A DNA stretch of 64,000 nt from Lepidodermella squamata (GCA_047495785.1 JBLDXI010000019.1:1984001-2048000); one strand, 5' to 3'. Counted from the stretch's first letter, positions 7,321 through 27,231 are shown. The notes: generated from the letters alone by a model not told the origin. Translations and numbers: made by a program.

Positions 7321-9347
7321 ATGCGAGAGAACTTCCTCAGCGCAGCATTATCTCTTCCGTTCTTTTTTGCAGTGACAATAGACTGTCGAGGTAATTATTG
7401 CATTGAACATCCGCTATGGATAATACTTTTGTATCTCAGGTTTTGTTTACTACCCTCCATACGTTCAACCCAAGGGACTTACAATCGGAAGACCATGCCC
7501 TAATCTCAACCAATGGGTTATCTCTCTTCCTGAAAAGTGAGTGAATTGAATCAATAAACTTTGATGGAATTTCTCGTTTAGATTTACTTCACCAGTCCTT
7601 GGCAAAGACATTCAGTGCCGCGGATCGGTGAATAACATTGATTTCCTCGCGCCAATGAAATCTGCAAAGTTCATTGCTCCCGAAGCTGTTGAAGAGCTTA
7701 TAGCATCACCTAGCTCAAATGAAAAAAAGATGCTGATATTCACATGCCGGGATGCTATCAATCGCGTCTTCAAAGACTCGTTGTATTCTTGGATTCACAT
7801 CTGGGAGCAGAATGGAAAAACTGGTTTTAAAACTACGCTGCCTCAAGATTCGAACGGTGAGCTGCTTCCCATTCCAATTTGAGAAATATTGCACCTCCTT
7901 TACTTCAAGGTCGGATGTTTTTTCCCGGACCATGGCTCGGAAATGACACAATAGCTTGCAGTCGATACGATTCTAATCATGGGTACCTCGTTCCCATCAG
8001 AACTTGGAGGGTGACCTCTAAACCAATCGATCCTCAGCTCAGTACCCGAACTGTCAAAAATTCTCCATGCGATGCAACAGATGTTTCGGTCACATCTAAA
8101 GTTGAAGTTATTGCCATATCAAGGGAATTGAGATTCGACGCATTCTGCCCTATTTCTGCCGTATGCTACGACATGCCCGCCGAAACAGCGTAAGTTTCGA
8201 GCCCATATTCCGAGTTTATATGACTTTCCTTCATCTCAGTTTCTATGAATTCTCGATTCCGGGAATTTGCAAGAACGCTGAGTCACGTGACGCGTTACCA
8301 AGCTGCATTCTCGATCCAGTAAAAACTAGACATTTCAGTTACACCTGTAGATGGAACAACGGCGCTTCAGGAACTGTTCTAATGATTATTCAACATGGTG
8401 CTCGTTTCAAGAATGAATCACAGTTCCGAGCGGTTTATTTCCGAGAAAATGACAAGGACATCACCCTGCCGTGTGACGTCGATAGCGGTGGCCTGCCCAG
8501 GTGGGAAAGGTACGATGAAATCCTGAATTCTTATCAAGGTTAAGTTTTGCTGAAAATAGCAACCTGAAATCACATTTTTTTAAATAGAAATTCGCAATGG
8601 ATTGGATTGAAAGGGATGATTGTTGAAGGGAATACTCTGAAGTTCGAAAATATCACGAAGGAGCATCAAAGCAGCTATCGATGTGTCCTCCCTCAACCGG
8701 GCAATTTGGCTCCCGATCCTGTCTATGGCTACTATTTCGTCAAAATCTACTCCGCCTCGAATAACTGCTCAGCTTCAACTGGAAACAAAGAAGAAAATAC
8801 TCAAATGATAGATCTTGACATGGTCTCGATTCTAACAGTATCATGCAAAGGGGCGGAAGATTTATCAAACTGTTCCCCATACGATCCGTTATGCACCCCG
8901 CAAGACGCCGCCCTACTGAAAAACGGGGGTGTATGTGCAACAAGCTTCGAAAACTATGACTGCCGGCAAAACTTGAAGGTCAAGTCGAAAAACCCGCTCG
9001 AAATCGAAATCTACTTGCGAGGGAATGATACGCAAGTTCGAAAAGCTGCCTCTCTAGTCGAAAATTACGAACGATTGGTCCACGAACTAGCTGAACTTTC
9101 AAATGATGCTGGAGTATATTCTATCGAGCTGTGGTATGGAGATCCTGTAAATTTAAGACTTCAAATCCCTTTGAAAATCAAAGCCATCGTGCCTGAGAAG
9201 CCCTCGATGCCGTTTTCTGTGTTTGTAGCAAAATACTGGCTTGAACTGTTGGTTGCATGTTTTGTACTTATCAGTATTTATTTCGCATTAGCAACCGGGT
9301 GTTTTCAAAGATGTTTCAGATCAAGAAGAAGCATGAATTTGTTTTAA
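7321..9347 (+). CDS. Single-pass type I membrane protein with an Ig-like domain (6 exons)
   Basis: Signal peptide MRENFLSAALSLPFFFAVTIDC. Five short GT-AG introns (first 7391-7439) join the ORFs in frame. Ig signature ITLPC...W...GNTLKFENITKEHQSSYRC. TM YWLELLVACFVLISIYFALATGC and a short basic tail. Confidence 0.75.
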
Positions 9348-9373: not shown

Positions 9374-10652
9374 TCAACTCATCATACCACTCAAGAAGTA
9401 ACTATCAGCTGCTACCCCAATCAAGGCGAAGGCAAACGCGAATGCACCATCGATAACTCGAGCTTTGTTCCTTGACAAGAATTTAGCTAGCTTTGACTTC
9501 GAGCTATCGTCCGCCCTCACCCTTTGTGATTTAACGCTAGAAAAAGCGAATGTGATAAGTTCGTAAAGAGTAAGGGCCAATCCTGAGATGAATTTGAAGA
9601 TGACCATGTTGACGAGATGAACTGATTCAGAAGATCGGGGAATCTGGCTGAAAATTGATTCCAGCATGAAAGAAAACGCTAACACCAGTGACACTCCAAA
9701 ACAAGGCCTGTCTGGCACATCTGGCGGTAGGATTAACGCTGCTATTTGAGTGATGTAAAGCGAGAAAATCGGGAGAAAAACATTCGCGATGTAGTACTGA
9801 TAACGTCTTTTGAACGATAGAGTAAAAACCATTCGAGAAGTTGGAGCGTCCGCATTTTGACTAGAATTTTCGACTTGGCTCGTCAAAGGTAGGACAAGTT
9901 GCCATATATCGGTATCCCCCATGAATGTTTCATTCGCAGACGGGTCAATGTTGAAGAATCGAATTTTGAAATACAGGAAGGTCGTAACCTCATCCGCGTC
10001 GCAGATTATAGAGCAAGTGAGTGTGTCGAATGGAAATTTACGGAATTCGAAGCCGTCGCATAACGACACGAATCGATTCAGCGAGTAAATTCCAGCTTTG
10101 CTACTCAGTGGGTAAAGGTAAATGACGTTATTGAATTTCCTAAGAGATCGTAAAAGTACTTATTTAACCGCCTAAAAGTGATAAGATACTTACTCTTCAA
10201 GGGGCCTAGGTTGACGCAGAGCGTTCATGTGAACTAGTCTAGGAATCCATTTTCCTTTTGCTGAGAAGCTGATCATAACCCTTTCTTCCGTATAGTCGTG
10301 GAGAGTCGAGTAGGTCTCGCATAAGCCGCTCTGCATCAATATTTCAGAGCACAGAGGGATGCGGCAAGGATATTTCCATTCAATTACCATTTGGCCCCAA
10401 ACTGTCATGCTAAAAGAAATATCCCGCGACAATTGACAAATAGCCACATTGATCCTACCTTTGATCCAGATCGTCGATCCCAATCATTCGGAAGAGGGAA
10501 AAGAAGATGTTCACCTTCAGCGCTTCGCGCCAACCCCTTCTGGCATGTGTATCGAAAGGTAGGCTGGTAGAATTCACCTCAGGGCATATCTTAGCAAAAT
10601 TTGAGAAAATGAGGTCAGTTGGGGGTAGTGACACGTTATACGCAAGAGACAT
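9374..10652 (-). CDS. Divergent Cys-loop ligand-gated ion channel subunit (LGIC-1); no evident signal peptide
   Basis: 3 exons (introns 10410-10458 and 10140-10193). Cys-loop CDGFEFRKFPFDTLTC, pre-M1 FKRR, four TM helices, M2 DRPCFGVSLVLAFSF. Confidence 0.85.
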
Positions 10653-10737
10653 TCTTTTTAGATCATTTATTTAGCTAAAAAATTCCATTACTGAATTATT
10701 TATTTTGCTTTATCATGTTTGATAGGATGATGTAGGC

Positions 10738-12106
10738 CTAATCATTCGCCATCATCGAGAATAAAAAGTAAGCATCCGTCGCTATTCCGATAGCAATCAT
10801 CGCTGCTGCGAAAATCAAATCGGCCTGCCTGCCTCGGCTAAGAGTCGAAAGCGCTCGATATTTGACTGGGATGAGATCCTGAGTTGAAATAACAGACTCC
10901 TTCCGGCCTAAAGGTTCACTCTCAGTCACGCAGCACGCAGCGAAAACGATCAATTCATAGAATGTCAGGACCAATCCAGACACAAATTTGAATACCACCA
11001 TGTTGATCAAATGAACACTTTCCGAAGTCTTAGGAATCTGGTTTAGGACCATCGATAGAGTGAAGGAGAAAGCAAGGACCAAAGTGACGCCAAATGAAGC
11101 TCTATCCGGAACATCTGGTGGCATGATCAAAGCTGCGATTTGCATAACGTACAGGGATATCGTTGGCAGGAACACGTTTGCGATGAAATATTCATATCTC
11201 CGCTTAAAAGTTAGCATGAAAATCATTCGAGACAACGGCGCATCTCCATTCTGAGTTGAATTTTCAACCCTATAGGACAGTTCTTCGGCCTTATAGATCC
11301 AAATATCAGTTTCGCCGAGGAACGACTTCTGTGCCGATTCGTCGACTATGAATAGGTCAATCTGATAGCGGACGAAGTAGATATTTTCGTCAGAGTCGAA
11401 AATCAGTGAGCAGCGAAGGGTGTCAAATGGAAATTTTTTGAATAAAAAACTGTCGCAAACAGCGTCGAATCGACCAGTCGCAAAAATGACAGATTGACCA
11501 TACAATGCGTAGAGATAAATCAAATTATTCCACTGCCTGTAAGATGAAACCATCAATAGAGTTGTAGAGGGATATTTTATTCAACTTACTTGTCAAAAGG
11601 TTTAGGGTCGGATAAAGCGTTCATAAGGGCTATGCTCGGTTTCCAGATGCCACCGCTGGGCATGATAATCATAGTCTTATCCATCAAAGCTAGTTCGTCT
11701 TCGCTCTCGCATATTTCTGAATCTGGGAAAAGTATGGTGCAGTTCGGAACTGGGCACGGATAATCCCATTGCATTAGCATGATACCCCACAGAGATAGAC
11801 TGGAAAATAAAAAATGATATTCCAAACGCAAAACATGTCTTATGCGCACCTTTGCTGCAAATCATCGATTTCTATCATTCGGAACAGGGTGAAATTCGTT
11901 AAAACTTTCACAGGTTGCGCGAAGTCTGATTTCATTAGGGAATCCATTGGCAAACTTTCGGAAAGTATGTCCGGGCATATTTCTAGATATCTCTGGAGCA
12001 CTTCAGACGAAACTGGTGATGGATAAAGATTGGGCACATCCACTGTGACCCCGGCAGATGACCCGCCGACTAAGACTGTTAAGAAAACAATTAATTCAGT
12101 AAGCAT
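10738..12106 (-). CDS. Divergent Cys-loop LGIC subunit (LGIC-2)
   Basis: Signal peptide MLTELIVFLTVLVGGSSAG, FRMIEIDDLQQ, CDSFLFKKFPFDTLRC, M1-M4, same 3-exon structure. Confidence 0.88.
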
Positions 12107-12229
12107 TCTTTTTGACCAAAGAGTTTGGGAAAATATTTTATTTTGAAAAACAATGCCGGATGTTTGATGATTAGAATTGCTCGAAAAATTAAGCCGTCTG
12201 GATTGAGTAAACAAATGGTTTTAGATTTT

Positions 12230-14022
12230 TTAATTGATAGTGCTGTTAGGTGGATTTGTTGCTCCGGAAATGAATCGACTACCTCTGGGCCCGAATAATG
12301 GCAAGCCAGAGAGGATTTGAACGAGTGGAGGCGTAGTAGCTTCAGGCTCCGGGTGATGGTGATGTTCCTCGTTTATCGCTTCATGTAATGCCGCAGTGGA
12401 ATAATCGATCAGAACGATGAAGTAAGTGCACATGGCTCCGAAGAGCTGCGAGAAAAAAGAGAATAATAAATTGGATTTCAAAATGATTAGCAGGACGCAC
12501 TATGATCGCAGTTTGCCGACGTAGGGGCAATAACCCGACTAGAGTTAAAGCGACTTGCTCTCCTGATAGCTGATTCAGCAATACCAATAGCTTTGAAAAA
12601 AATGAATACAATTATTGACTGAAATTGCTAGCATATAAATCAAACCTCTGTAGCTCCGAGAGGATTGGTCGGTAGCATACGAGCTGATACACGGTGTAAA
12701 CTGCGGATCACCGATAAAGAGGCAACATTTAGATACGCTGATGCTACGACGTGTACAAAAAGTAGATGAAACGAAGACAGTACCCAGACCATCCAAGTCA
12801 TACGGCCGAACAGGGTATCGCTGCCTAGAATGATATGATGCGCGAGAATTAGCATGCCAAAGAAGCCGTGAACCATCGACATGCATATCGGAACTCGTGC
12901 CAATCGATCCGTTATTTTGACAGACTTCAACAGCCGAAAGTAGATACGACGAATCATTGATAAGTCGACTTTCGACAAAACCGAGCGGTATGGATTCTTA
13001 ACCCCGGCGTAGATCGATGAGCTGAAGTCGTCCAAGGAATCAGTTTCCGCGAATTCATCCAAATAGTGAGGCCTGTGATCTTTCTCGCTTGTTGTTGCAA
13101 TAGGCTCGTAAACACTATCGTCTGATTCGTCTTCGCTGAATGCTTCTTTGATCTTTTTCTTGGGAATCCGCGAAGTTTCTTGAGGGCACATTTCGCTGAT
13201 TAAACGTCGCAGCTCCAGGAATTGCTTCCCTTGAACTACTGCGAGACAACTTATCAAAGCACTCGCGAAAAACACCCCACTATCATTGATAGCCTGGAGG
13301 AAGGTGCCGCATAATGCAACAGCTTGCGGCCACGCCATGTATCCCTCGTATTCTGGCGTGTGAAAGGGGGTTGCGAACACACCGAACTGCTCCGGGTATA
13401 TCAGCATCAGCACAGTGATAGCACAAACTGCAATGGCTAGAATGATCCAAGAACAAACGACAAAAGTGACGAGCCAAACTCTAGTCCTAGCTGTTTTTTG
13501 CCTTGCCATAGATGTATCTTCGCCTTCTCGAGTAGTCGGCCCATTTCCGCTGATGTTTATGAAGGCGGTTCCTAGTACCAGGTCGTTTGAATTGAGACGA
13601 TCAACTAAAGCTTGCCATTTCGAGCTGCCAAACCAGCAAGCCACTACGACACTCGTTCGTAAAATTGCCCCGACGAAGTAGTACATACAAATAGCGGTTA
13701 TGTAAGTTAAATCTGTGACGAGACCCACCGGGGCGAGTTGGTAGAGAGTGGCGAATCGGAAGGCGTTCATCCAAGATAAGGCCATCATTACCGCCGAGTA
13801 AGTGATGGCCAACATAATCCAAAAACATCGATATCCATCCATCATCACGTTCCTTGGCAGTGAAATAGCATTTCCGTTGATTGACATGCGATCCTCCGAG
13901 CCTTCTGGGTCATCGACGGCATTGCTGAATGTGTATAGTGCGGAGAAAGATGGCGGGAATAGGCCCCAGATTTTCAAGGATACAAGCAGCAAGTTGACGG
14001 ATTTATCCTTGGGTGCATTCAT
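12230..14022 (-). CDS. Gustatory receptor-like (Grl, 7tm_7 / insect chemoreceptor superfamily) protein
   Basis: About 7 hydrophobic segments and N-terminal LKIWGLFP. Two phase-0 introns near the 3' end (12591-12645, 12446-12500) flank a 90-nt exon (LLVLLNQL..ALTLVGLLPL). The last exon has LFGAMCTYFIVLIDY, matching the TYhhhhhQF TM7 motif. Confidence 0.85.
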
Positions 14023-14689
14023 TTTTTATGATGAGAAATAAATACTGAACAAATTTTGGCAGCGATGGGGATTATCGGCAAAAAAAGCGACGGCGCGTGA
14101 CTCTGGGAATTGAGTGATCCTAATCTGTAGACAAAGGGACTCATTGTGTCCGGTGCTTTTCCTAACAATGCCTAGTAAATTATACTTTGCGGCGGGTAGT
14201 ATATACCTAACAAATAAGGCAACGCGATAGGTTTAGATCACGTTGAGCTGGATGTTTAGGATTTTGAGTACGTGTGAAGAGAATATCCTAGGCAGTAGGC
14301 AGATCATTGAGACTTTAACCTGGGAATTCGGTGCGATTGATTAAATAAAGCAAACACCCCTTGATTTTGGACTGTAGCATTGGAACGGAAAAGATTTCAG
14401 CATTAGCTTGGTTCTGCTATCGATCAGAGTCATTGTTGGTTTTAAAATGCACTCGTCTGCTGTGTAAATAATATCTCAATTTCAATGCTATTTCTGTGGA
14501 ACAAATTTTTCACGACAGGTCACATTTTATTTTGAAATTATCAGACTTAAAACAACAAAAATACAGATATAAAAGTTCAGCATGCCAAAAAGTATAGGAA
14601 AGGTGCCCTCAGACTAAAGAAAATTATCATTGCTTCACTACAGCTGGACCAATTAAGTCTGTAATTTAAATTCGAAATTGCTGCGATTT

Positions 14690-15983
14690 TTAGTCGTCAC
14701 TCGTCATTCTCACGAAGTAGTAAGCATCAATTATGATACTAATCAGTATCACACATCCACCAAAGGCGACATCGGCGATTCGAACCGGTGCGAGGTCTCG
14801 CTTCCGCTCAATGAAATGGGCTGAGACAGCAAAAGTCACCAACTCATAGAAGCTCAGTACCAGACCCATAGTAAATTTGAAGGTAACGACGTTAACCAAA
14901 TAGACCTCCTCAGATGTTTTCGGTATATTCTCGAAAACAAGTGAGAGAATTACGGAAAAGGCTAAAACCAGCGTGACTCCAATGCTGGCCCGATCCGGAA
15001 CATCGGGTGTCATGATCAAGGCCGAGATCTGGAGGCAATACAATGAGATCACCGGAAGGAAGATGTTGGCTCCGAAATAATAAGGCCGGCGCTTGAAGGT
15101 GATTGGGAAATTCATGCGATTAACAGTAATGTTACCGCTAATTATTATGTCAGTAATTTCGGCTGGGCCTACACTTACGAACTTCCATATATCAGTATCG
15201 CCCATAAAAGTGCTTTTAGTTGATTGATCAACATCGAAGAATGTGACGTTATATTTGACAAGCCCACTGCTGACGTCGCTTACAACAATAATTGTGCATT
15301 CAAGCGTATCGAAAGGAAATTTTTTAAAGGAAAATTGATCGCATGCCGTGACTAGACGAGTACTTTCGAATGCGTTGAAGTTTTTTCCGCCTTGTAAGAA
15401 GGGGTATATCCACATTATCAGCTGCTGCGGCTGCCTACAAATAAGATACAAATACGAATTATTTTTACTCCACAAAGTTACTTCAAGAATGGCTTCGGAA
15501 TTTCGAAGTAATTGGCATGAGTGAAAGATGGGTACCATCCAGCATTCACTGGCCTGAATATGATGGACTCATAGATCAGTCCAGTGTCGGTTAGGATCTT
15601 GCAGAGTGTCTCATTTTGGTACAGGTCAACACAACTTGGAGTTGGACACGTTGTCGACCAAGAAAATGTCATTGAAGCCACAAGCGACATGCTTGAATAG
15701 ATCAATTGAAAATGTTGAACAACGAAGTACCAAGTTACCTTTGTGCGAGATCATCTATCCCAACGAATCGAAAGAGGACTAAGTCGACAAATATTTCAAT
15801 TGGTTGCAGTTTCTTAGTCAGCCAGACGTTTGGTAGCGATGAAGAAGTCGACTCTGGGCAGTAGCGCTGGTAAGCCTCTTCCAATAAAGGAATCTGGAGG
15901 CTGCCAGTGTCCTGCGATCTGCATAAAGCTGCGACACAGATGGCTACGTAAAAAAGAGTTGCAGTTCTTGAGACGAGCCCCAT
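14690..15983 (-). CDS. Divergent Cys-loop LGIC subunit (LGIC-3)
   Basis: Signal peptide, YCPE, FVGIDDLAQ, WYPSF, CDQFSFKKFPFDTLEC, M1-M4, 3 exons. Confidence 0.88.
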
Positions 15984-16942
15984 ATCGTTCGACTGTGAGC
16001 GAAAATGTTCCAAACTGAATGCTGACAGAAAGTTGATGGTGTGTTATTTTAATTTTTAAAAAGCAATAGCCTGATGAAGAGATTCCTATGAACTCTGTAG
16101 CTTGTAGACTGATCGAAAAGTCCAGAAAAGTCAAATATCTGGATTTTTCTTATATCCGGTAACGAATAACGCGTGGTGCTAATGAAAAATTCGGTGTTGT
16201 TTACATTTCTCGCCATTTTCAGCGCAAGAACAATGGTTATCAGATGTTGGAGCAGGGAATCAAAATCGAAGCAGCCAACAAACGACAAACATTAAATTAA
16301 TCCAAGTATCTAAGAACCAGAAATGCAATAAGAACATTTCGGCTGAAGACTTTGAGTCCCGCTGGTGTACATACTCAACAGCGATTTCGACAGTCGAAAG
16401 ATCCAAAGGGGAAGAACAAATAATAGTGAGGGCCTAAGTATAGATATAGTACTCTAGAGGAACCTACATAGTAAACATAGTAATTTTGCATAATAACACT
16501 TAAGTTGGAGTATTCAAAAGACGCGATCGAAGCGAGATAGGCCGAACGTAGCGAGAAGGCAGTGTGCTATCGAACTTGAATAGCGAGAAAAACTATTGAC
16601 AACTGTGTTGCGACCGTCGAACGCCCTATCGTCCGATTATTTCGGTAGAGCAAAGCTAGATTGATAATGTTTACTGCAAGGTCAACACCTTGCCATCACG
16701 AGAAAAGCGCTCTCAATTTCTATTCCAGAATCAAATAGAAAATGCATTTTTGGAAATCATCAAAATAATTGAAATCCCTGCTTGGATGAGTTGTAGCGAA
16801 TGATTCTCAAACATTCGCTCATGTTGTTATGCTTCAGACAAAGAAACCGGCTGAGAAACTCCGAAAATTGTGCATTTAGCATCGCGCAAAGCGGTTCAGC
16901 GGTTCAGGATAACCAGATTGCAAATGTTGCTTTTTTGTAGTA

Positions 16943-18351
16943 CCGTATTTGCCTGAAAATAAGCCCAGTCTCAAACACAAGCCCATGGGCTTCTATAACG
17001 GGGTGGGCCTTAATTTCGGTACCAAAATCGAAATCAAAACCTGAGGCGATATATTGACATTAATGCATTAAATATTGAATCATTTTGAACTTATTTTCAA
17101 TAAATTCCACTGAAATTAATTTAAATGTATTAAAATGGGGCGATTTTCACATCCAACGCTCTCTCTCTCCTCGTGTTCTCTCAAGCTCAGAGACTCATGT
17201 GGTACTTGGGAGATGTGTTACCGTTTTACAAACCGTTTTACATGCCGCCTGATATCATTTGACGTATTCCAATGTGATTTTATCCTGCTAGCGATGGGCT
17301 GCGGTCCGTTTAAATGACGAATGAAGATGTTTGAATTGAATCAAGTTCATTTTCCGAATATTTTCTGCCAAAACCGAAAAGTACTTATAGTGCGTTCACA
17401 AACTACTTCGGAGAGGCGTCCGAAGTTTTCGGCCACCGAAGTTTCGTAACAGGCCTCAGAAGTTGCGTAATCGCTGCCCGAAGTTTAGATTTTCGTTCAC
17501 AAACGCGCGCACTTCGGCCAGCGCGGCCGAAGTTTTAACAATAGTCGGTGCGCACGCACCGAACAAAGGACGCCATCGATAATGAAAATTATAATTGAAA
17601 ACAAAATAACCGATCTTTTCGCGACCCCGCCGTTTTCTTTAAGATCGAGATCTTCAGGCCACTGCAAAAAACTGATCTTTGCGTAAATACGTGATTTTCA
17701 TGAATGAGATTTTTTGCTGGTCGCAGAAGAAAAATCACGATCGCTGCTAATGAGGTTATTTTTAGCCAAAACGACCTTTAAAAAAAACTATTAAAAAAAC
17801 ACAGAAATCAGGCATCTAAATCGAAGCGCCGCGTCCTGGTACGTCTCATGGAAAAAGTGGTTTTGATGAGAATGCGCGAGAATATTTTAGCAAATATTTT
17901 TTTTTATAGCGAATCTGGTGAACTGAGCGCTGAAATTTAGCTTCTTTTTATCCTCATCAGAAGGCGCGTCTCACTATGCAAACAATTCGGAGAATTAAGG
18001 TAAAATGGAAAAAATTGCATTGACCCTGAGCATATATAAGAGCCATACCCGCGCGTGGTGTGTGAGCGCGCGGCCAAACTTCGGCCGCGAACAGTAGAAA
18101 CTTCGGTCGTCACGCTGCGCGCGCGCGTAGAAAAGCCACTGATGAGGCCGCCGAAGTTTTGCTATTTCTCTCCGAAGTTTCTACTTCGCTCTCCGAAGCG
18201 GTCGGTCTCCGAAGTAGTTTGTGAACGCACTATTAGCTATAGGCCCGGGGCCATATTAGAAGCCCGGGCTTCTAAATTTATTTTGCTGAAAACGCGTAAA
18301 TTTTGAAATAGTACTCGAATATAAGTCGGGCTTATTTTCAGGCAAATACGG
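16943..18351. mobile_element. Non-autonomous Tc1/mariner-pogo (Tc2-like) DNA element
   Basis: TIRs CCGTATTTGCCTGAAAATAAGCCC / GGGCTTATTTTCAGGCAAATACGG flanked by TA on both sides; no transposase ORF. Confidence 0.85.
17388..18232. mobile_element. PIF/Harbinger-type MITE nested in the previous element
   Basis: TIRs TAGTGCGTTCACAAACTACTTCGGAGA / TCTCCGAAGTAGTTTGTGAACGCACTA, TTA duplication on both sides, many subterminal CCGAAGT motifs. Confidence 0.85.
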
Positions 18352-18697
18352 TAATATGGATTTTTATTTTCGTGAATCACTCTTCCTCTGTGATTTTTCG
18401 CATTTTTTAGGACTTCAGGAGTATTTACCCACGTATAACGGAGAGGGTAAAAGCTTCCTCTCGATTACTATGTAAAAGAGAGTTTTTGAATTGAAGGGAG
18501 GGGTTTTCGGACCGTTTGAAATAAATGTGGAAAAACCTCATCTTCTGGTATATGCTGTATATTCTATCTGTGGGTGATTCAGAAGAACCCTCATTCAGAT
18601 TGACGTCCCTATAAAATCCTCATTGGGAAGGTCATTAGATCGATTTCATTAACGTTGAAATTTTTTCAGATTGTTCTTTGAATTATCAGCATTGAAT

Positions 18698-20018
18698 TCA
18701 TGCAAGGATCAAAGCGAAGTAGTAGGAGTCAACAGCCACACTAATTACTATAGACAGGAATGCAACAATAGCGTCAGCATATCGCACATAATTAATAGGC
18801 AGCTTCCTATCGAGTAGCTCCACCGAGATGGCGAAGGTAATGAGCTCGTAAAAATTTAAAACTACCCCGAACGAAAATTTGAAAGTCACAATTTCAACCA
18901 AATAAACAGTTTCAGATGTTTTCGGAATGTTTTCGAAGACAAGTCCAAGGATTACCGAAAAGGCTAGTACAAGAGTGACACCGTAACTAGTTCGCTCAGA
19001 GATATCAGGAGGCATGATCAGAGCTGATAATTGAAGAATGTACAGGGTGATGATGGGAAGAATAATCGTCGCGGCGTAGTAGTCGGGCCTGCGTCTGAAA
19101 ACCACTGTGAAAACGAGCCTAGTTAGGGTGACATCCACAGTCTGCACCGCCTCAACAACTTGGCCCGGTTTGCTGCCTTCGAATGCCCAAATGTCAGTCT
19201 CGTCCATAAAAAACTCGCGAGAAGCAATCTCGACTTCAAATCCGGTTATATTATATCTCACCGACAATATTGAGTCGTCAGCTTCGAAAATCATGGAACA
19301 TTCAAGACGATCAAACGGGAAAGTTTTGAAGGAAAAGTTGCTGCATGAAGAATCAACTCGAACAACGATGAACAGAAGGATGCTTGGATCAAAGAATGGC
19401 CATAATGTCATAATAGATCTGGGATACCTAGAATAATTTACAAATATTCAAAAGAACTAATGGTAATTATATGTTTCACATTTCTAAAGGCCTTGCATTC
19501 TGCATTGCGTTCATGTGGCTCAAACGAGGAATCCATGAATTGCTGACTTGCTTTGAAATTACCAGATCAGTCAAGAAATTGCTACGCTGCCAATGACTAC
19601 ACCGTGTTTCATTTTCTCCTAACAATAGTTGGCACGACGGTATCGTGCAAGGCGCACTCCAGTAGAAATAGGCTCCTACTAAGAGGGACATACTAAATGA
19701 CAAGCAAAAGCAATTTTTAAGCAATAAAAACATAAACAAATAAAGCAACCTCTGTTCAATATCGTTGATTTCTATCATTCGATTCAGGGTCATGTTAACA
19801 CTGACAGTCATCGTGGTGTTCCACTTCAGGATCCAGTCCATTGGCAGATTCGGGGACCACGCCTCCGGGCAGTATTCGAAATACTTTTGCTCGAAAGCTA
19901 TCGCCCGTGGTACCTGGCTAGGTGGCAACGTCTCAAAATCGTGCGTGACAGTGGAATCAATTTTAAAAGCCAAAACTGTGATAAATGTCGTCAGCAACAT
20001 GACCATTTTCCCAAGCAT
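18698..20018 (-). CDS. Divergent Cys-loop LGIC subunit (LGIC-4)
   Basis: Signal peptide MLGKMVMLLTTFITVLA, YCPE, WIPRL, CSNFSFKTFPFDRLEC, M2 ERTSYGVTLVLAFSV, 3 exons. Confidence 0.88.
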
Positions 20019-20896
20019 GATCAATACGTAGTTGCGATTCGATGTGTCAGACGACTTTGCATTGAATAGCGAAACAAGTATATTGCCGAGGTTTCCTGTA
20101 ACTAAACCGGAGGTATGGGTAAATACCGCGTGCGATTTTATCACAGCGAGTAAAACATGACTAACCTTCGAAAATCGAAATACGCGATTCAATCATCTCA
20201 ACAAATAAACAAATGTTTCGGATAAAATTATGGACTCAGCAATTTGATTTTTTCTAGGATCGACTCTCATTTTCAGTATCAAATCATTTATGGCTAGAAA
20301 TTTGTTACACCCACGATATTGTTACAATCAGGTCTCGAACCCAAAAGTAGAAAGACGTCAACTATGCGGAATCTTTTTGAAATGGCATTTATTTTGTTGT
20401 TAGTTGCGGAAAAACCGTAAAATTAGGATTGTGTTCAGTGAAAAGTTGCCGCCAGCAAATTATAAGTCATTTCTGGGCAAAATTTCCATTAGGCATCTTC
20501 TAGCACAGGAATTTTCGGCTTGCATGGACGAGGATCCAGCTGCACAGCTACAGAGATAAAATGTGTGAATTAATCGCTGCCCAGTCACAATTTTTCAGTT
20601 TGAAAGTGGCGAAAGTTAGTAGCAGGATGTGTCTATGCGGAGGATGGCGTCTATGTTGGTTTGTAATGCTTGGCAAAACAATATCTCTAACGAACACATT
20701 TTTCATGACAAATCAAATTGTATTATAAAATTAGTAGAATTTTGAACAGCTTAATTACAGGAAATACAGGAAAAAGTCTCAGAACGCCATAGAAACATGG
20801 GAAAAAATGTGCCATCAGCGTAGAGAAACTTATCCTTATAACAAAAATCACTGCACGAATTGGGTCACTTAGTAAAACTCGAAATTGCTGTTACCT

Positions 20897-22218
20897 TCAG
20901 GCGTCACTTGTCATTCTCACGAAGTAGTAAGCATCAATTATAATGCTAATCAGTATCACACATCCACCAAAGGCGACATCAGCGATTCGAACCGGTGCGA
21001 GGTCTCGCTTCCGCTCAATGAAATATGCCGAGACTGCAAAAGTCACCAACTCATAGAAGCTCAGTACCAGGCCCATAGTAAATTTGAAAGTAACCACGTT
21101 AACCAAATAGACTTCCTCTGAGGTTTTCGGGATATTCTCGAAAACAAGTGAGAGAATTACGGAAAAGGCTAAAACCAGCGTGACTCCAATGCTGGCCCGA
21201 TCCGGAACATCGGGTGTCATGATCAAGGCCGAGATCTGGAGGCAATACAATGAGATCACCGGAAGGAAGATGTTGGCTCCGAAATAATAAGGCCGGCGCT
21301 TGAAGGTGATCGGGAATTTCATTTGAGCAGTAGTAAAGTCACCGCTTAAATTTATGTCAACGATCTCGGCCGAGCCTAGACTAACAAGCTTCCATATTTC
21401 AGTATCTCCCATAAAATCGAGTTTAGCTGATTGATCAATATCGTAGTATGTGATATTGTATTTGACAAGTTCACTGGTGACGTCGCCTACAACAATAATT
21501 GTGCATTCAAGCGTATCGAAAGGAAATTTTTTGAACGATTGATCGCATGCCGTGTCGAGACGGGTCGTTTCGAATGCGTTGAAGTTTTTTCCGCCTTGTA
21601 AGAAGGGGTATATCCACATAATCTGATGCTGTGGCTGCCTGAAATTGCAAATAAGCAAATACAGATACGAGTTGTTTTCACTCCCCGTTATGTTACTTCA
21701 AGAATGGCTTCGGATTTTCGAAGTAGTTGGCATGCGTGACCGTAGGATACCATCCCGCATTCACAGGTCTGAATATGATAGCATGTTTGATAAGTCCCTT
21801 GTCTCTCAAGATCTTGCAGAGTGTCTCATTTTGGTACAGGTCAACACAACTTGGAGTTGGACACGTTGTCGACCAAGAAAATGTCATTGAAGCCACAAGC
21901 GACATGCTTGAATAGATCAATTGTAAATGTTCAATATAATCAAGCACCATATTATACATGCTCAAGAAGTTACCTTTGTGCGAGATCATCTATTTCCACA
22001 AATCGAAAGAGAATAAAATCGACGGTAATTTCAATGGGTTGCAGTTTGTTAGTCAGCCAGACGTTTGGTAGAGATGAAGAAGTCGACTCTGGGCAGTAGC
22101 GCTCGTAAGCCTCTTCCAACAAAGGATTCTTAAGGCCGCCCGTGGCCTGCGATCTGCATAAAGCTACGACGCAGATGGCTACATAGGAAAGAGTTGCAGT
22201 TCCTGAGATGAACCCCAT
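20897..22218 (-). CDS. Divergent Cys-loop LGIC subunit (LGIC-5), close paralog of LGIC-3
   Basis: Near-identical TM region to LGIC-3; CDQSFKKFPFDTLEC; 3 exons. Confidence 0.88.
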
Positions 22219-22547
22219 GTCAATTGTCTGTTAGCAAACAATGCTTTATGTACTGAATGCAGCCATGTGAAGAGAATTGTGATGCGTATTTTGTGAGTTT
22301 TTATTTTACACAAGCATTATTCTGACGTTTGGGAGTCCCATGAACGTCATAGCGTGGAGAATAATCGAAAAGTACAATATCTGGATGTTTTTTACATCCG
22401 GCTACCAATATTTTCTAGTGAACAAATCGTCGTTGTTTACATTTCTCGCTGTTTCCATACCATAGTACTTCAATGCCCTTCGTGTTCATTAAGCGTGTTC
22501 ATCGTGTTCAGCGTCCTAAATTAGGAAAGATAGCGCTAGAGAAGGTT

Positions 22548-22619
22548 GGTTCGCTGGCTCAATGGTTCAGCTCGCTCTTCCCGGTCAGGAGATCCCGAGT
22601 TCGAATCTGAGTGGACCCA
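22548..22619 (+). pseudogene. tRNA-like sequence (tRNA pseudogene or tRNA-derived SINE head)
   Basis: A-box TGGCTCAATGG, B-box GAGTTCGAATC, acceptor stem GGTTCGC/GTGGACC, anticodon-like stem CTCTT/AGGAG with a non-canonical loop (CCCGGTC), T-rich sequence downstream. Confidence 0.55.
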
Positions 22620-22818
22620 TTCTTTTCTGCGCTTTTCTTGTACACTCTTCTGTCATACGAAAACTCTCCTTCAGGCTCTAATTAGAGTTCCGGCAGTATA
22701 TCTGTTCATCACTAATTTTAGACAAGGGTGAAAATAACTGCGAGCTAACTATGCATTTTCAACAAATCACTAAGAATATTGGACAAGTAGTTGTTATCAA
22801 AAGTTATTCATTTACTTC

Positions 22819-22919
22819 TGTTTCAAGGTGACGGGTGACAAGTAAAAAAGCGGCTTTTATACGTGAATGGAGAGGCAAAAACAAATGACTTTTTACTTGT
22901 CACTTATCACCTTGAAACA
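22819..22919. repeat. ~100-bp inverted-repeat element (small MITE-like hairpin)
   Basis: TGTTTCAAGGTGACGGGTGACAAGTAAAAA pairs imperfectly with TTTTTACTTGTCACTTATCACCTTGAAACA. Confidence 0.6.
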
Positions 22920-23082
22920 AGCTTAAATCTGAGTTATCAACGACGATACTAAGTAAATGACAAAAAGAAAATGATTTCGAAACCTTGACAACAAATAATC
23001 TGTAAAACCGTGGCACTATACAGTGCTGTGCCTGAGCCTCATTCAACAAAGCAGAATAATTATGTATTGGTATTGGTCTCAG

Positions 23083-24379
23083 TCAAGCTATCATAAGGGA
23101 GTAGTAATATGAGTCCACAATGATACTGATGACGATAGCCATCGATGCGAATGCTACGTCGGCGATACGAACAATCTTGATTGACTGCTTTCTGCTTTCA
23201 AGTTCAGACGCCGCAGCGAAAGCGACCAATTCATAGAAGTTGAAAATCAGGCCAAATGTGAACTTGAAAGTAACGACTTTTACTAGGTAAACTGTTTCTG
23301 ATGTTTTGGGTATGTTCTGAAAAACCATCGACAGGACAACGGAGAAGGCTAGAACCAATGTAACGCCGTAACTAACTCTGTCAGGGCTGTCGGGAGTCAT
23401 TATCAGAGCCGATATTTGAAGAATGTAAAGAGACAGGACCGGCAGTAAAATAGTTGCAGCAAAGTATTCTGGTTGGCGTCTGAAAGCCACAGGGAAATGC
23501 ATCCTGCTCACGTAGACATCGCCACTTTGATGCGAATCTTCGACGCGACCTGATAGCTCCCAGCTCTCCAGTGTCCAGATATCTGCATCGCCGATAAAGC
23601 TATCCCTGTCAGACAACTCGATTTCAAACCCAGTCACGTTGTACCGCACAAGCGCGGTAATATCGTCACTATCGAGGATGAAAGAGCATTCCAATGTGTC
23701 GAATGGGAATTTTCTGAACGAAAATTGGTCGCAGGATGTGTCTATGCGGATGATGGCGAAGAACGAAATCGTCGGGCTGTAAAACGGCCAATACAACATG
23801 ATGTCGTCATTCCGCCTATAGGCAGAGTATCAATATTACGACGCTTCGAATTTTGAAGAGCTTACCGATCGAATGGTCTAGCGTTCACCATTGCATTCAT
23901 GTGGCTAAGCCTTGGTAGCCAAGTATTGCCGATTAATTTTGAAATTTTGAGATGTGTTACTAAATCACTTCGGATCCATTCATCACAGCGAGATTCGTTG
24001 GTGCCGAAGATTTGCTGGCAAGTAGGGGTTGGACACGGTGGATCCCACATAAAATTGACTGTCGCTAGCAGTGACATGCTAAGATTTTAGATCATCGGAA
24101 ACACTGAATCATCACAAAATTGAGTTTCTCTCACCTTTCAGATATATCGTTGATTTCGATGAGTCGGTTGAGATAGATGAATACGTCAACCGTCATAGTT
24201 TTGTTAATCTTCATCAGCCATTCTGTTGGCAGGGAAGAAGACAACGCTTCCGGGCAATATTCGAAGTATTTCCTTTCAAACGAAGCGCCTTGGGTTGGAT
24301 AGCTCTCCGAAAAGGTGGCATCCTGATAGGATACGGTTTGAACGACTAGGCCGAACATCACAAGCAGTGGGAAGAACAT
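23083..24379 (-). CDS. Divergent Cys-loop LGIC subunit (LGIC-6), closest to LGIC-4
   Basis: Signal peptide MFFPLLVMFGLVVQTVS, KYFEYCPEA, WLPRLSHMNAM, CDQFSFRKFPFDTLEC, M1-M4. Confidence 0.88.
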
Positions 24380-24497
24380 TACCGTCCAAGGACTAATTAA
24401 ACGCGCTAAAATACTAAATGAGCTCAATATATGAATAAAATGAGTTGTCTACATGGAATGCTAAACAAGCAGTTCCGCAACTTTTTGAGGGGTCTTA

Positions 24498-24731
24498 CTT
24501 TTAGCGGAACCAAGTTTTCGAATTAAAACCACTTTTCGATGTCATGATTGATCGGAATTTTTAATCTTCGGAATTTTTAATCGGAATGAATTCAGCGTAA
24601 AATTCTGTATACGAAGCATTCCTCAGTATAGAAATCATACATTGCATTAATTTCGTAGAAATATTCGAATAGCGACCATTTGCTGATTTAAAATTAGGTT
24701 CCGCAACATGCGGATTTGGTTCCGCTAAAAG
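24498..24731. repeat. Degenerate inverted-repeat element
   Basis: CTTTTAGCGGAACCAA ... TTGGTTCCGCTAAAAG inverted pair, with extra GTTCCGCAAC copies; termini unclear. Confidence 0.4.
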
Positions 24732-24927
24732 AAATTTCTACTTTTTGAGAGAATAGGATGCCATAAAATTTGGACAAAGTTAGGATGTCCGTTATATTCA
24801 TTGTTATGCTTTCGGTCTTGCGGTGTTAGAAAATTCTTTTCAGGGGATCTTGTAAAATCGAAGCCAAGTTGCCATTCCGAATGGTTGATTTTCTACAATT
24901 TGAGTTCTGAACAGCATGAAATCACTA

Positions 24928-25113
24928 CAGTGGAACCCCGATTTCCCGTCACCTGATTTTCCGTCTGACGGGAAATCGCGATATGTAAATATTAGGAGCG
25001 ACTTGGACCCGCAGAGGGCAATTAAAGGCAAACTACCTGGATTTCCCGTCAATTTGGATTTCCCGCCAATATTTTTGTGGAACCGTAGATGACAGGAAAT
25101 CGGGGTTCCACTG
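24928..25113. mobile_element. pogo/Tigger-type MITE
   Basis: TIRs CAGTGGAACCCCGATTTCC / GGAAATCGGGGTTCCACTG with flanking TA; internal GATTTCCCG repeats. Confidence 0.85.
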
Positions 25114-25496
25114 TAGGTAAGCTTTTGCGCTCGAGCTTGCCCCAATTTTGCGCTAAGTATTCGGCTAATATTTTCGGTCCGAATTAAGGATAAATTCTGC
25201 GTTTCAGGAAGTGCGCTAATTCAGCAATATTTTATTATATGGATTTTAATATCTCCCATTAAAGTGCAAGTTTATTTGCATATTGGATTAATTCCAGAGA
25301 AAAAAAAAGAAAAAATACGCAACAAAATCGATTTTGCTAAAAGGATGTCCCTTTAGGCACCGAATAGAAATCATTTCGAGGCAGATCTCATAATTGACAA
25401 AAAAATAGATGATTTTTATTCGCCTTTTTATTCTAAATTCAAATAGATTCAAATAGATTTAACAGTGAAAAATTTTCTGAGCCCTCTTACGGGCCA

Positions 25497-27231
25497 TCAG
25501 TCATTAGAAGTAACTGATATGAAAAAGTAAAGATCTGTAATAACTTCAACAGCAATCAGGATGGCTGCAACAACGCAATCTATAATTCGACTGCCTCGAA
25601 GTAGCTTAGCTTTGAAGACCTTTTGGTCGCTCTTTGACATTTCATTCGCCTCCTTCTCGCTACTGCTTGCAAAGCCACATGCGATCATTTCATAGGTCGT
25701 TAGACACAGCCCGGTTAGAAATTTTATAATGACGAATTCGACGAGATAAATCCGCTCGGAAGTTCGAGGAATCCCTGCGAATACCATGTCCAAAATGACG
25801 GAAAACGACAAAACCATGGTGACGCCAAACGTGGCTCGTTCAGACTCGCCGGGCGGTATTATAAGCCCCAGCATTTGTAGAAGATTCAACGAGATTACGG
25901 GGATAAAAATATTTGTTACAAAGTAATTTGCCTTTCGCTTGAAAGCGATCGGGAAAATTAGCCGGCTCATGTTGTAATGGTCACTGGTGCCTTGCGCCGA
26001 CATCTCCATTCGGCCATTGCGGACACCGACAAGTTCCCAAATTTCGGTTTCGCCGATGAATGTATCGACCGCAGATGCGTCTAGAGCGAAGCTGGGCTGC
26101 GAGAAATGAGCTACGTCGGTGATTTCGTTAGCGTCGAAGATCAGTGAACATTCAAGGGTGTCGAATGGGAATTTCGCGAAGGAAAATCCGTCGCAGGCGG
26201 TGTCGAATCGTCCCATTGATACTATCAACGCCCAACTCGTCGTTGGTAAGATCGATATGAAACGTCCGGAATTTCTTAAGAGAAATTTAAAAATTTAAAA
26301 AGATCCGCCTGCGACTGATCCTAATGAATTGTTCCATAATTTTTTTAATAAAACATTTTTTTGAAATTACGAAGTATATTTGAAGTAGTCTCAAAAATAT
26401 TTAATTTGGTAATTAACTTGTTACCGTCTTTTTAAAAATTTTACACGGGCTCTCATTGTAAATTTTCAATTCAAGGGAATTAAATGAAATTCTCGGTTGC
26501 ATGCTTTTAAAACTTAGTTCACTGAATTTTCCTTGCTTTTTCAGAAAAATTTGAAAATTCGGGACCATGAGATGATTTTGCCACAGCTCATTCGATATAG
26601 AGGGCAAAATCTGCTAGGTATTTACGGGTTAAAATTAAAAAAAAATATTTATTTAAATTATTTAAATTTAATTTTAAATTCGAAAATTCGAAAATTCGAA
26701 AATTCTGAAATTTTTCAAACGAAAATAAGAATTTATTTAAATTATGTAGAGCTTACGCTTCAATAGGATACGAGTTAGCCACGGCGTTGACGTGGGTCAA
26801 AACCGGCCGCCATATGCTCGTTTTTTTACTGACGCGTATAACGAGTTCGCCCAACAAGTTTTCTTCCACCGACAAGCATTGCGTAGCGTTGAATATATCA
26901 GAGCAATTTAACGGCTCGCAAGGGTAATTCCACGACAGGTAGATTAAACCGTAAAGCGACATTCTGCGAGAAGAAAAATCTATTATATGATTATCAAAAT
27001 TATTTTTCAATACGTTTGAGCAAGGTCATTGATTTCGATAAATCTGAACAAGTCAAACTGAGTTTCGATTGTCAGGGTCTGGTTTTGATATGGCGAATTC
27101 CACCACTCGAAGGGTAACGCCTCCGAAAGTGCTACTGGACATCTTGCAAAGAATTTCTCGCGAGCAATATCGGAAATTATGGCCGCTTCTGCGCCGCCAA
27201 TAAATAGCAGAAAATACGGCCATAAATGCAT
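25497..27231 (-). CDS. Divergent Cys-loop LGIC subunit (LGIC-7)
   Basis: Signal peptide MHLWPYFLLFIGGAEA, ARCP, FRFIEINDLAQ, WRPVL, CDGFSFAKFPFDTLEC, M2 ERATFGVTMVLSFSV; second intron expanded to ~480 nt. Confidence 0.88.

What the first reader, a model, noticed from the sequence alone, without database searches (positions are those of the whole stretch)
9374..27231. Tandem array of seven highly divergent Cys-loop channels with an embedded gustatory-receptor-like gene: candidate novel chemosensory receptor system
Seen: seven same-strand, 3-exon pLGIC genes with shared intron positions in 18 kb, with a Grl between copies 2 and 3; all seven reading frames look intact. Established: neurotransmitter pLGICs are conserved and rarely arrayed like this, whereas cephalopod chemotactile receptors are tandem, fast-evolving nAChR derivatives that lost the ACh site, and GR/Grl proteins belong to the insect chemoreceptor superfamily. 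Inference: an independently evolved family of sensory pLGICs clustered with a second class of chemosensory ion channel.
Basis: partly seen in the sequence, partly recalled or inferred. Interest (0 to 1): 0.9.

Follow-up and report, generated by a model that had tools for sequence, protein, structure and literature searches.

The report
Orphan Cys-loop channel array with GRL
Seven neighbouring, transcribed genes of an unidentified invertebrate encode stripped-down relatives of nicotinic and serotonin-gated ion channels that lack the usual transmitter pocket. A taste-receptor-like channel gene sits among them, and also next to a related channel in a second species, but whether any of them senses chemicals is untested.

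Summary
There are exactly seven minus-strand genes at 9374-27231. Each has three exons, GT-AG phase-2 introns at identical positions and an open frame of 391-421 aa. They are divergent pentameric ligand-gated channel (pLGIC) subunits of the cationic nAChR/5-HT3 branch. All have a minimal M3-M4 loop, four extra extracellular cysteines, a P-(D/E)-R pore entrance, and Asp/Asn where loop B normally has Trp. Six have a 14-residue Cys-loop.

Two caveats apply: copy 1 has no signal peptide, and copy 5 has a 13-residue loop.

The embedded gene is a three-exon, 560-aa seven-helix protein that I read as a GRL at about 85%. RNA contigs confirm both of its introns and one pLGIC intron.

Purifying selection is clear (g3/g5 dN/dS 0.27; 25 synonymous against 6 nonsynonymous variants in g1+g2).

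The seven copies form one clade inside an unnamed C-x14-C subfamily found only in metagenome and Logan assemblies. One relative also has a homologous GRL 1.2 kb away.

The chemosensory reading is untested. Tandem arrays of divergent nAChR-like orphans are already known in lophotrochozoans. First readers of this scan noted similar arrays elsewhere in this genome.

The parts
9374..10652 (-). pLGIC copy g1, 391 aa. Exons 10652-10459, 10409-10194, 10139-9374. No signal peptide. Its start lies 85 nt after the g2 stop.
   Evidence: Gene model and alignment; hydropathy; RNA-run depth of 10-36 over exon 3; 9 synonymous against 3 nonsynonymous variants.
10738..12106 (-). pLGIC copy g2, 421 aa. Exons 12106-11850, 11799-11590, 11536-10738. 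Its start lies 123 nt after the GRL stop.
   Evidence: Pfam Neur_chan_LBD and Neur_chan_memb, both below the cut-off; 16 synonymous against 3 nonsynonymous variants.
12230..14022 (-). GRL (seven-transmembrane ion-channel family candidate), 560 aa. Exons 14022-12646, 12590-12501, 12445-12230. Two phase-0 introns of 55 nt. The TM7 motif TYFIVLIDY starts at 12427.
   Evidence: Model; spliced joints 12590>12646 and 12445>12501 in run X1; language-model hits to GR families only; topology; motif unique in the window; homologue in L006.
14690..15983 (-). pLGIC copy g3, 399 aa. Exons 15983-15739, 15691-15482, 15434-14690.
   Evidence: the exon 2/exon 3 junction sequence is present in an X1 contig (loose end at 15352); dN/dS 0.27 against g5.
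18698..20018 (-). pLGIC copy g4, 403 aa. Exons 20018-19750, 19692-19480, 19427-18698.
   Evidence: Pfam.
20897..22218 (-). pLGIC copy g5, 398 aa. Exons 22218-21974, 21906-21697, 21638-20897. Its Cys-loop has 13 residues.
   Evidence: Pfam.
23083..24379 (-). pLGIC copy g6, 396 aa. Exons 24379-24135, 24078-23866, 23815-23083.
   Evidence: Pfam.
25497..27231 (-). pLGIC copy g7, 400 aa. Exons 27231-27014, 26963-26757, 26274-25497. Intron 2 is 482 nt.
   Evidence: Neur_chan_memb at 30 bits, above the 28.1 cut-off.

Best explanation
This is a lineage-specific tandem expansion of one subfamily of orphan pLGIC subunits, with a genuine GRL gene as a conserved neighbour.

Shown:
- Each gene encodes a complete subunit: an extracellular beta-sandwich with a Cys-loop, helices M1-M4, an M2 with 9' Leu and 6' Thr/Ser, and an acidic -1' residue.
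- The genes are spliced and transcribed, and are kept under purifying selection.
- The seven copies arose by duplication within this lineage.

Inferred:
- The subunits assemble into homo- or heteropentameric channels that are probably cation-selective.
- The channels open on an extracellular ligand that is not acetylcholine or serotonin. The cation-pi Trp of loop B is Asp/Asn, the loop A Tyr is absent, and loop C has neither a Cys-Cys pair nor a conserved aromatic residue. A conserved His in loop A and an acidic loop B would suit a cationic, metal or proton ligand.
- The near-absent M3-M4 loop argues against classical synaptic anchoring.
- The most divergent parts are the binding loops (22-31% identity) and the most conserved is the pore (57-66%), so the copies probably differ in ligand rather than in conduction.

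The GRL, spaced 123 nt from g2 (which is spaced 85 nt from g1), may be co-transcribed with g2 and g1. A sensory role is possible but not shown.
For: - Gene models.
- Family assignment: Pfam hits to both halves in the right order. A profile of exon 3 matches 160 solved chains; all 60 shown are cationic pLGICs, with 5-HT3A at 3e-21 and alpha7 at 3e-14.
- Fold: the AF2 model of relative P0002 has pLDDT 88 and pTM 0.81. Foldseek places it with nAChR and 5-HT3A at E of about 1e-20 and TM up to 0.83.
- Pocket and pore residues.
- Transcription: RNA contigs cover the genes, depth is zero over intergenic 13974-14373, and three spliced junctions are seen.
- Selection: dN/dS 0.27 for g3/g5, with all older pairs saturated at synonymous sites yet still open. 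pN/pS is about 0.07 and P = 9e-12.
- Phylogeny: the seven copies are monophyletic (SH-aLRT 95) inside a 25-row clade (96) whose members largely share the C-x14-C loop.
- GRL.
Against: - There are no functional, tissue or ligand data.
- g1 lacks a signal peptide, so at least one copy may not insert as a normal subunit.
- Spliced joints were shown only for the GRL and g3. X1 is labelled 'RNA?'.
- Pro at -2' is the hallmark of anion channels, so ion selectivity is uncertain.
- The tree lacks this genome's other pLGIC arrays, which could break the monophyly.
- The GRL has no significant HMMER or Pfam match to known GRs, and its AF2 model failed.
Confidence: 0.6

Rival explanations
1. One reading: the seven pLGICs and the GRL form one chemosensory receptor system. 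They would be co-expressed in sensory cells and detect external chemicals, an independent parallel to cephalopod chemotactile receptors.
For: - The transmitter pocket is lost and the binding loops are the most divergent parts.
- The array is a tandem, lineage-specific expansion, as in chemoreceptor families (PMC11526382).
- The GRL is embedded with operon-like spacing of 123 and 85 nt to g2 and g1.
- A homologous GRL lies 1.2 kb from a related pLGIC in a second species.
Against: - There are no expression-site or ligand data.
- Six of seven relatives' pLGIC loci have no GRL within the contig sequence held on each side, up to 10 kb and less where the gene lies near a contig end.
- GRLs are not necessarily sensory.
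- Strong purifying selection (pN/pS about 0.07) is not the diversifying pattern reported for octopus receptors.
- Expanded nAChR-like genes in molluscs were linked to development, immunity and stress, not only to sensing (PMC6896357).
Confidence: 0.17
2. They are conventional synaptic or extrasynaptic receptors for an endogenous non-cholinergic signal (an amine, peptide, proton or metal) that simply expanded in tandem. The GRL is an unrelated neighbour.
For: - The pore and gating elements are intact and purifying selection is strong.
- Nematode and lophotrochozoan orphan pLGICs have repeatedly turned out to be transmitter-gated (PMC8536830; PMC9962794).
- The GRL is absent from most related loci.
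Against: - The minimal M3-M4 loop leaves no room for the usual clustering and trafficking motifs.
- The GRL neighbourhood recurs in two species.
Confidence: 0.2
3. The 560-aa protein is not a GRL but another multi-pass membrane protein, and the TM7 motif is a coincidence.
For: - No HMMER or Pfam hit.
- The AF2 model has pLDDT 42 and gives meaningless Foldseek matches.
- The motif departs from the canon at two of four positions, and I loosened the search pattern after seeing it.
Against: - Two sequences only 23% identical (the window protein and the L006 protein) each draw their named nearest Atlas clusters only from GR, Trehalose_recp, DUF267, DUF3537 or OR sets. The remaining 32 of each 100 hits are unnamed clusters.
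- Topology is N-in with long inner loops.
- A phase-0 intron lies six codons before the motif in both genes, as described for the GR family (PMC9998090).
Confidence: 0.13
4. The array is decaying: some or all copies are transcribed pseudogenes.
For: g1 lacks a signal peptide. g5 has a one-residue Cys-loop deletion.
Against: - All frames are open and all 14 splice sites are canonical.
- Synonymous sites are saturated while the proteins stay alignable.
- g1 itself shows 9 synonymous against 3 nonsynonymous variants.
Confidence: 0.05

Closest known systems
Expanded nAChR-like orphan pLGICs of lophotrochozoans (Jiao et al. 2019, PMC6896357; Alpo4, PMC10338036)
   Same: Both belong to the cationic nAChR/5-HT3 branch and form lineage-specific tandem arrays with high sequence diversity. 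Both lack the loop C Cys-Cys pair and have no known ligand. The only named sequence hit is a Capitella protein. By my reading of the accession prefixes, the top AlphaFold DB matches look molluscan, rotifer and flatworm.
   Different: Here the M3-M4 loop is only about 10-35 residues. The Cys-loop has 14 residues, there are four extra extracellular cysteines, and loop B is acidic rather than carrying the Trp that Alpo4 keeps. These genes have two short introns, whereas the molluscan expansions are mostly intronless.
Cephalopod chemotactile receptors (summarised in PMC11526382)
   Same: Both are nAChR-derived pentameric channels that no longer bind acetylcholine, arranged in tandem and expanded in one lineage.
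   Different: No special sequence or structural affinity was seen: no such receptor appears among the 60 sequence hits shown or the top 50 Foldseek hits. Selection here is purifying. Sensory expression is not shown.
5-HT3A receptor (best solved relative) and alpha7 nAChR
   Same: The fold, the FPFD Cys-loop, the M2 pattern with 9' Leu and an acidic -1', and the IP.TS motif after M2 are shared (alignment).
   Different: Identity is about 14-19% for the modelled relative P0002. Loop B Trp is replaced by Asp/Asn. There is no MX/MA intracellular domain. Pro is at -2'.
Gustatory receptor / GRL seven-transmembrane ion channels (PMC7746228; PMC9998090)
   Same: Shared features are seven helices with an intracellular N-terminus, long inner loops, a TM7 motif of the T-Y-h5-x-x type, and a phase-0 intron just before the TM7 exon. 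The language-model neighbours are GR families, including plant DUF3537.
   Different: The motif ends in D-Y (D-F in the relative) rather than Q/K/E-F/L/M. The protein is long at 560 aa, because of a 113-residue inner loop and a 51-residue tail. There is no HMM-level similarity to described GRs.

Membership tests
pLGIC (Cys-loop receptor) superfamily | Extracellular beta-sandwich followed by four transmembrane helices | tested here: met
   Pfam LBD and memb hits fall in the right order. The profile matches 160 solved pLGIC chains. The model of relative P0002 (pLDDT 88) superposes on nAChR and 5-HT3A.
pLGIC (Cys-loop receptor) superfamily | Cys-loop of two cysteines separated by 13 residues, containing F/Y-P-x-D | tested here: not met
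   FPFD and both cysteines are present in all seven, but the spacing is 14 residues in six copies and 13 only in g5. The top-scoring relatives P0001-P0014 and several more share the 14-residue spacing. This is a variant, not an exclusion from the superfamily.
Cation-selective branch (nAChR / 5-HT3 / ZAC) | Closest to cationic members, with an acidic residue at M2 -1' | tested here: met
   All 60 solved-chain hits shown are cationic channels. The -1' residue is D or E in all seven. Caveat: Pro at -2' is typical of anion channels (my own knowledge).
Acetylcholine-gated nAChR subunits | Aromatic box: loop A Tyr, loop B Trp, loop C Tyr residues, and Cys-Cys in alpha subunits | tested here: not met
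   The loop B position aligned to the 5-HT3A Trp is D in six copies and N in g7. The loop A position holds M, A or V. There is no vicinal Cys-Cys in loop C.
Cephalopod chemotactile receptors | Membership of the molluscan nAChR-derived clade, a hydrophobic ligand pocket, and sensory-cell expression | tested here: inconclusive
   No chemotactile receptor appears among the best sequence or Foldseek matches. No reference sequences were available for a joint tree. Expression site is unknown.
Lophotrochozoan expanded nAChR-like families | Tandem, lineage-specific, highly divergent nAChR-like genes | tested here: met
   Array and monophyly. Placement in a named family of Jiao et al. was not tested, and the organism is unidentified.
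GR/GRL seven-transmembrane ion channels | Detectable similarity to known GR or GRL proteins | tested here: inconclusive
   HMMER and Pfam find nothing. Language-model search scores 0.96, and every named cluster among the nearest 100 is GR-related; 32 are unnamed. This holds for the window protein and independently for its L006 homologue.
GR/GRL seven-transmembrane ion channels | Seven helices, intracellular N-terminus, inner loops longer than outer loops | tested here: met
   A Kyte-Doolittle scan gives K+R counts of 7, 20 and 3 in the inner loops against 1, 0 and 1 in the outer loops. The TM4-TM5 loop is 113 residues. The method is crude, not a trained predictor.
GR/GRL seven-transmembrane ion channels | TM7 motif (T/S)Yhhhhh(Q/K/E)(F/L/M) | tested here: inconclusive
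   The window has TYFIVLIDY: T, Y and the five hydrophobic residues fit, while D and Y are conservative departures. L006 has TNFFIMMDF. The loosened pattern occurs once in all six frames of the window.
GR/GRL seven-transmembrane ion channels | Phase-0 intron(s) near the 3' end, one immediately before the TM7 exon | tested here: met
   Two phase-0 introns are confirmed by RNA joints. The last one is six codons before the motif, at the same position in L006. The criterion comes from PMC9998090.
GR/GRL seven-transmembrane ion channels | Fold superposes on Orco or GR structures | tested here: inconclusive
   The single-sequence AF2 model has pLDDT 42, and its Foldseek matches are meaningless.

The most novel reading that the evidence does not exclude
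A GRL and a clade of minimal, non-cholinergic pLGICs form an ancient linked pair, kept adjacent in two divergent species. In this lineage the pair grew into a GRL-plus-seven-channel locus, part of which (GRL>g2>g1) is transcribed as one operon. That would be a new ionotropic sensory module built from two unrelated channel families.
Probability: 0.12. Interest if true: 0.8.

Novelty: new variant of a known kind. Interest (0 to 1): 0.5.

Why it matters
Orphan nAChR-like channels are the largest unexplained part of the invertebrate ion-channel repertoire. This subfamily is unusually tractable. The subunits are about 400 residues with almost no intracellular domain, which suits expression and cryo-EM. 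The binding site is clearly re-tooled, with an acidic loop B and a conserved His in loop A.

None of the 20 closest clusters I looked up carries a name in the protein collections, so the subfamily has probably escaped earlier censuses. The recurring GRL neighbour gives a concrete, testable hypothesis about co-expression of two ionotropic receptor classes. If it fails, the locus is still a clean example of a tandem pLGIC expansion under purifying selection.

Tried and rejected
- Word-index protein searches found one relative for exon 3 of g2, none for GRL exon A, and three for a family alignment. The exhaustive HMMER search was needed to find the family.
- Pfam on the GRL exons found nothing.
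- AF2 on GRL exon A without an alignment failed, and its Foldseek run was meaningless.
- I could not identify the organism. Rfam and tRNA scans of the window were empty, run and organism names were coded, AlphaFold DB organism names were masked, and none of the 20 relative clusters I looked up carries a name.
- I considered a sponge, placozoan or ctenophore origin, which would matter because Jaiteh et al. (PMC4795631) found no pLGICs there. I could neither support nor exclude it. The short introns and operon-like packing fit several phyla.
- The 452-aa ORF directly upstream of a relative's pLGIC (L012) looked like a second GRL candidate, but it is not a multi-pass protein.
- A simple single two-gene block duplication (g6-g5 to g4-g3) does not fit. 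Synonymous difference (pS) is 0.22 for g3/g5, but g4/g6 is saturated.
- Spliced full-length window proteins could not be handed to the structure or search tools, so P0002 served as a proxy for the fold.
Full report
**What is there**

The ORF list shows a repeating triplet of minus-strand ORFs. The nucleotides at each boundary give one consistent model for seven genes:
- Exon 1 ends two bases into a codon after a conserved (I/V)(D/N)D(L/I)xx motif.
- Exon 2 also ends at phase 2.
- Exon 3 runs to the stop codon.

All 14 introns are GT-AG. Thirteen are 47-67 nt and one (g7 intron 2) is 482 nt. The products are 391-421 aa with no internal stop. A tblastn of the models against the window finds these seven copies and nothing else.

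**What the proteins are**

- Pfam finds Neur_chan_LBD and Neur_chan_memb in the right order on the exon 3 translations. Most hits fall below the curated cut-offs; one is above.
- A profile of the seven exon 3 products plus one relative matches 160 solved chains. All 60 shown are cationic pLGICs, led by 5-HT3A (3e-21) and alpha7 (3e-14).
- The closest full-length relative, P0002 (about 33% identical), gives an AF2 model with pLDDT 88. Foldseek matches it to muscle nAChR and 5-HT3A at E of about 1e-20 and 14-19% identity.
- The language-model search agrees: 82 of 100 neighbours carry both Neur_chan families and the other 18 carry one of them.

Family features, from the alignments:
- The Cys-loop is C-x14-C around FPFD in six copies and C-x13-C in g5.
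- There are four extra conserved extracellular cysteines: one in exon 1 and three in exon 2.
- The M3-M4 loop is only about 10-35 residues.
- M2 has 9' Leu and 6' Thr/Ser, and the intracellular pore mouth reads P-(D/E)-R.
- The residue aligned to the loop B Trp of 5-HT3A is Asp in six copies and Asn in g7.
- The loop A Tyr position holds Met, Ala or Val, next to a His conserved in six copies.
- Loop C has no Cys-Cys pair.

The acetylcholine/serotonin pocket is therefore absent. The binding loops are the least conserved parts (22-31% identity) and the Cys-loop and M1-M3 the most (57-76%).

**Are the genes alive?**

Contigs of run X1 cover g1, g2, the GRL and the part of g3 that was laid. Depth falls to zero over intergenic 13974-14373. 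The contigs carry spliced joints at both GRL introns and the exact exon 2/exon 3 junction of g3. Only 9374-15373 could be laid, so g4-g7 are untested, and no joint was shown for g1 or g2.

- g3 and g5 differ with dN/dS 0.27.
- Every older pair is saturated at synonymous sites yet remains open and alignable.
- Of the 40 best-supported differences between the window and runs X1/X2, 31 are coding in g1 or g2. Of these, 25 are synonymous and 6 are not. That gives pN/pS of about 0.07 and P = 9e-12 against neutrality.
- This also holds for g1 (9 synonymous, 3 nonsynonymous). That is puzzling, because g1 has no signal peptide and starts 85 nt after the g2 stop.

**Relatives**

The exhaustive HMMER search finds 5233 proteins at E up to 0.001, 879 at E up to 1e-10 and 25 at E up to 1e-30. 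The closest relatives (P0001-P0014, P0017-P0019) share the 14-residue loop. The 20 clusters I looked up come only from ENA metagenome assemblies or Logan contigs, and none has a name.

The contigs of these relatives are clearly animal. They carry Sushi, Band 3, Fringe, an SH2 tyrosine kinase and INTS8, and they are compact. Some relatives have no introns; others are split like the window genes.

In a tree of 90 sequences the seven window genes form one clade (SH-aLRT 95), with topology (g7,((g1,g2),((g3,g5),(g4,g6)))). That clade sits inside a 25-row clade (96) whose members largely carry the C-x14-C loop. The array is therefore a duplication burst within this lineage, with one caveat: this genome's other pLGIC arrays, noted by other first readers, were not available for the tree.

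**The embedded gene**

The 460-aa ORF continues through two 55-nt phase-0 introns into a 30-aa exon and a 71-aa exon, giving 560 aa. Both introns are confirmed by RNA. HMMER, Pfam and single-sequence AF2 give nothing.

Four lines of evidence point to the GR/GRL channel family:
1. All 100 nearest Atlas clusters are 7tm_7, Trehalose_recp, DUF267, unnamed clusters or plant DUF3537, with a top score of 0.96.
2. Hydropathy and the positive-inside rule give seven helices, an N-terminus inside, and long inner loops. These match criteria iii-v of PMC7746228.
3. The last exon carries TYFIVLIDY. This is a close variant of (T/S)Yhhhhh(Q/K/E)(F/L/M) and is the only match to the loosened pattern in all six frames of the window.
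4. The last intron is phase 0 and lies just before the TM7 exon, as is typical of the family (PMC9998090).

A fifth, independent line came from a relative's contig. L006 carries a 433-aa homologue. Two collinear BLASTP segments score 5e-5 and 9e-5 at 23% identity. It has the same intron six codons before the variant motif TNFFIMMDF. Its Atlas neighbours are again only GR/OR-type families, with recognition 2468. I put GRL identity at about 85%.

**The link between GRL and channels**

In L006 the GRL lies head-to-head about 1.2 kb from a pLGIC that carries the 14-residue loop. The pairing therefore occurs in two species whose proteins are only 23-35% identical. It is not a general property of the subfamily: the six other distinct relative loci I examined (L002, L003-5, L007-8, L009-10, L011, L012) have no GRL.

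In the window the spacings GRL>g2 (123 nt) and g2>g1 (85 nt) each contain an AATAAA. A strong acceptor-like TTTTTTAG sits before the g1 start. This fits the operon-like packing that other readers noted across this genome, but I could not test it.

**Comparison with what is known**

Tandem, lineage-specific, highly divergent nAChR-like orphans are well described in molluscs and annelids (PMC6896357; PMC10338036). Cephalopod chemotactile receptors are a functional analogy only (PMC11526382), and nothing here shows affinity to them.

The variant features are:
- the 14-residue Cys-loop, for which no paper in the searched library holds the phrase 'separated by 14' together with Cys-loop;
- the near-absence of an intracellular domain in an animal pLGIC;
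- the acidic loop B;
- the four extra cysteines;
- the hybrid P-D/E-R filter;
- the recurring GRL neighbour.

**Verdict**

The sensory claim remains a hypothesis at about 15-20%. I could not identify the organism, and that limits how surprising the locus is.

Noticed in passing
window 8607-9347 (+): A 246-aa plus-strand ORF with cysteine-rich extracellular-looking sequence and one C-terminal transmembrane helix ends 27 nt from the g1 stop on the opposite strand. The two 3' UTRs must overlap. It has no Pfam family.
   Followed up: partly
window 10652 (g1 start) and 10653-10737: g1 lacks the signal peptide that its six paralogues have, yet it is under purifying selection (9 synonymous, 3 nonsynonymous variants). 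All introns share phase 2, so splicing of g2 exon 1 onto g1 exon 2 would stay in frame. This was not tested.
   Followed up: partly
window 9546-11582 versus 11737-14518: Run X2 differs from the window at about 1 site in 50 across g1 and most of g2, partly as half-depth alleles. Its contigs over the 5' end of g2, the GRL and the intergenic region show no differences. There seems to be a haplotype boundary near 11.6-11.7 kb.
   Followed up: no
window 14566-14645: An X1 contig ends at 14645 with 18 untemplated A on the plus strand, in the spacer between the g3 stop and the GRL start. It may be a plus-strand polyadenylated transcript or a library artefact, since X1 has many strand-switch joints.
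   Followed up: partly
window 15984-18697: A 2.7-kb gap between g3 and g4 has no pLGIC remnant, no Pfam hit on its ORFs, and only a short 21-nt repeat.
   Followed up: partly
window 14690-24379: g3/g5 are 86% identical (synonymous difference pS 0.22), but their partners g4/g6 are saturated. A single two-gene block duplication does not fit. Either g3/g5 is a later duplication or gene conversion has homogenised the pair.
   Followed up: partly
L007 8006-10750; L012 10001-12583; L003 4103-5751 and 10001-11191: Relatives' contigs also carry two pLGIC genes of this family close together, in tandem in L007 and L012. Intronless and split copies occur side by side in one genome.
   Followed up: partly
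window 33308-35270 (+) and 60452-61608 (+): A PAS-domain gene (probably bHLH-PAS) and an EF-Tu-type GTPase gene lie elsewhere in the window. I did not study them further.
   Followed up: no
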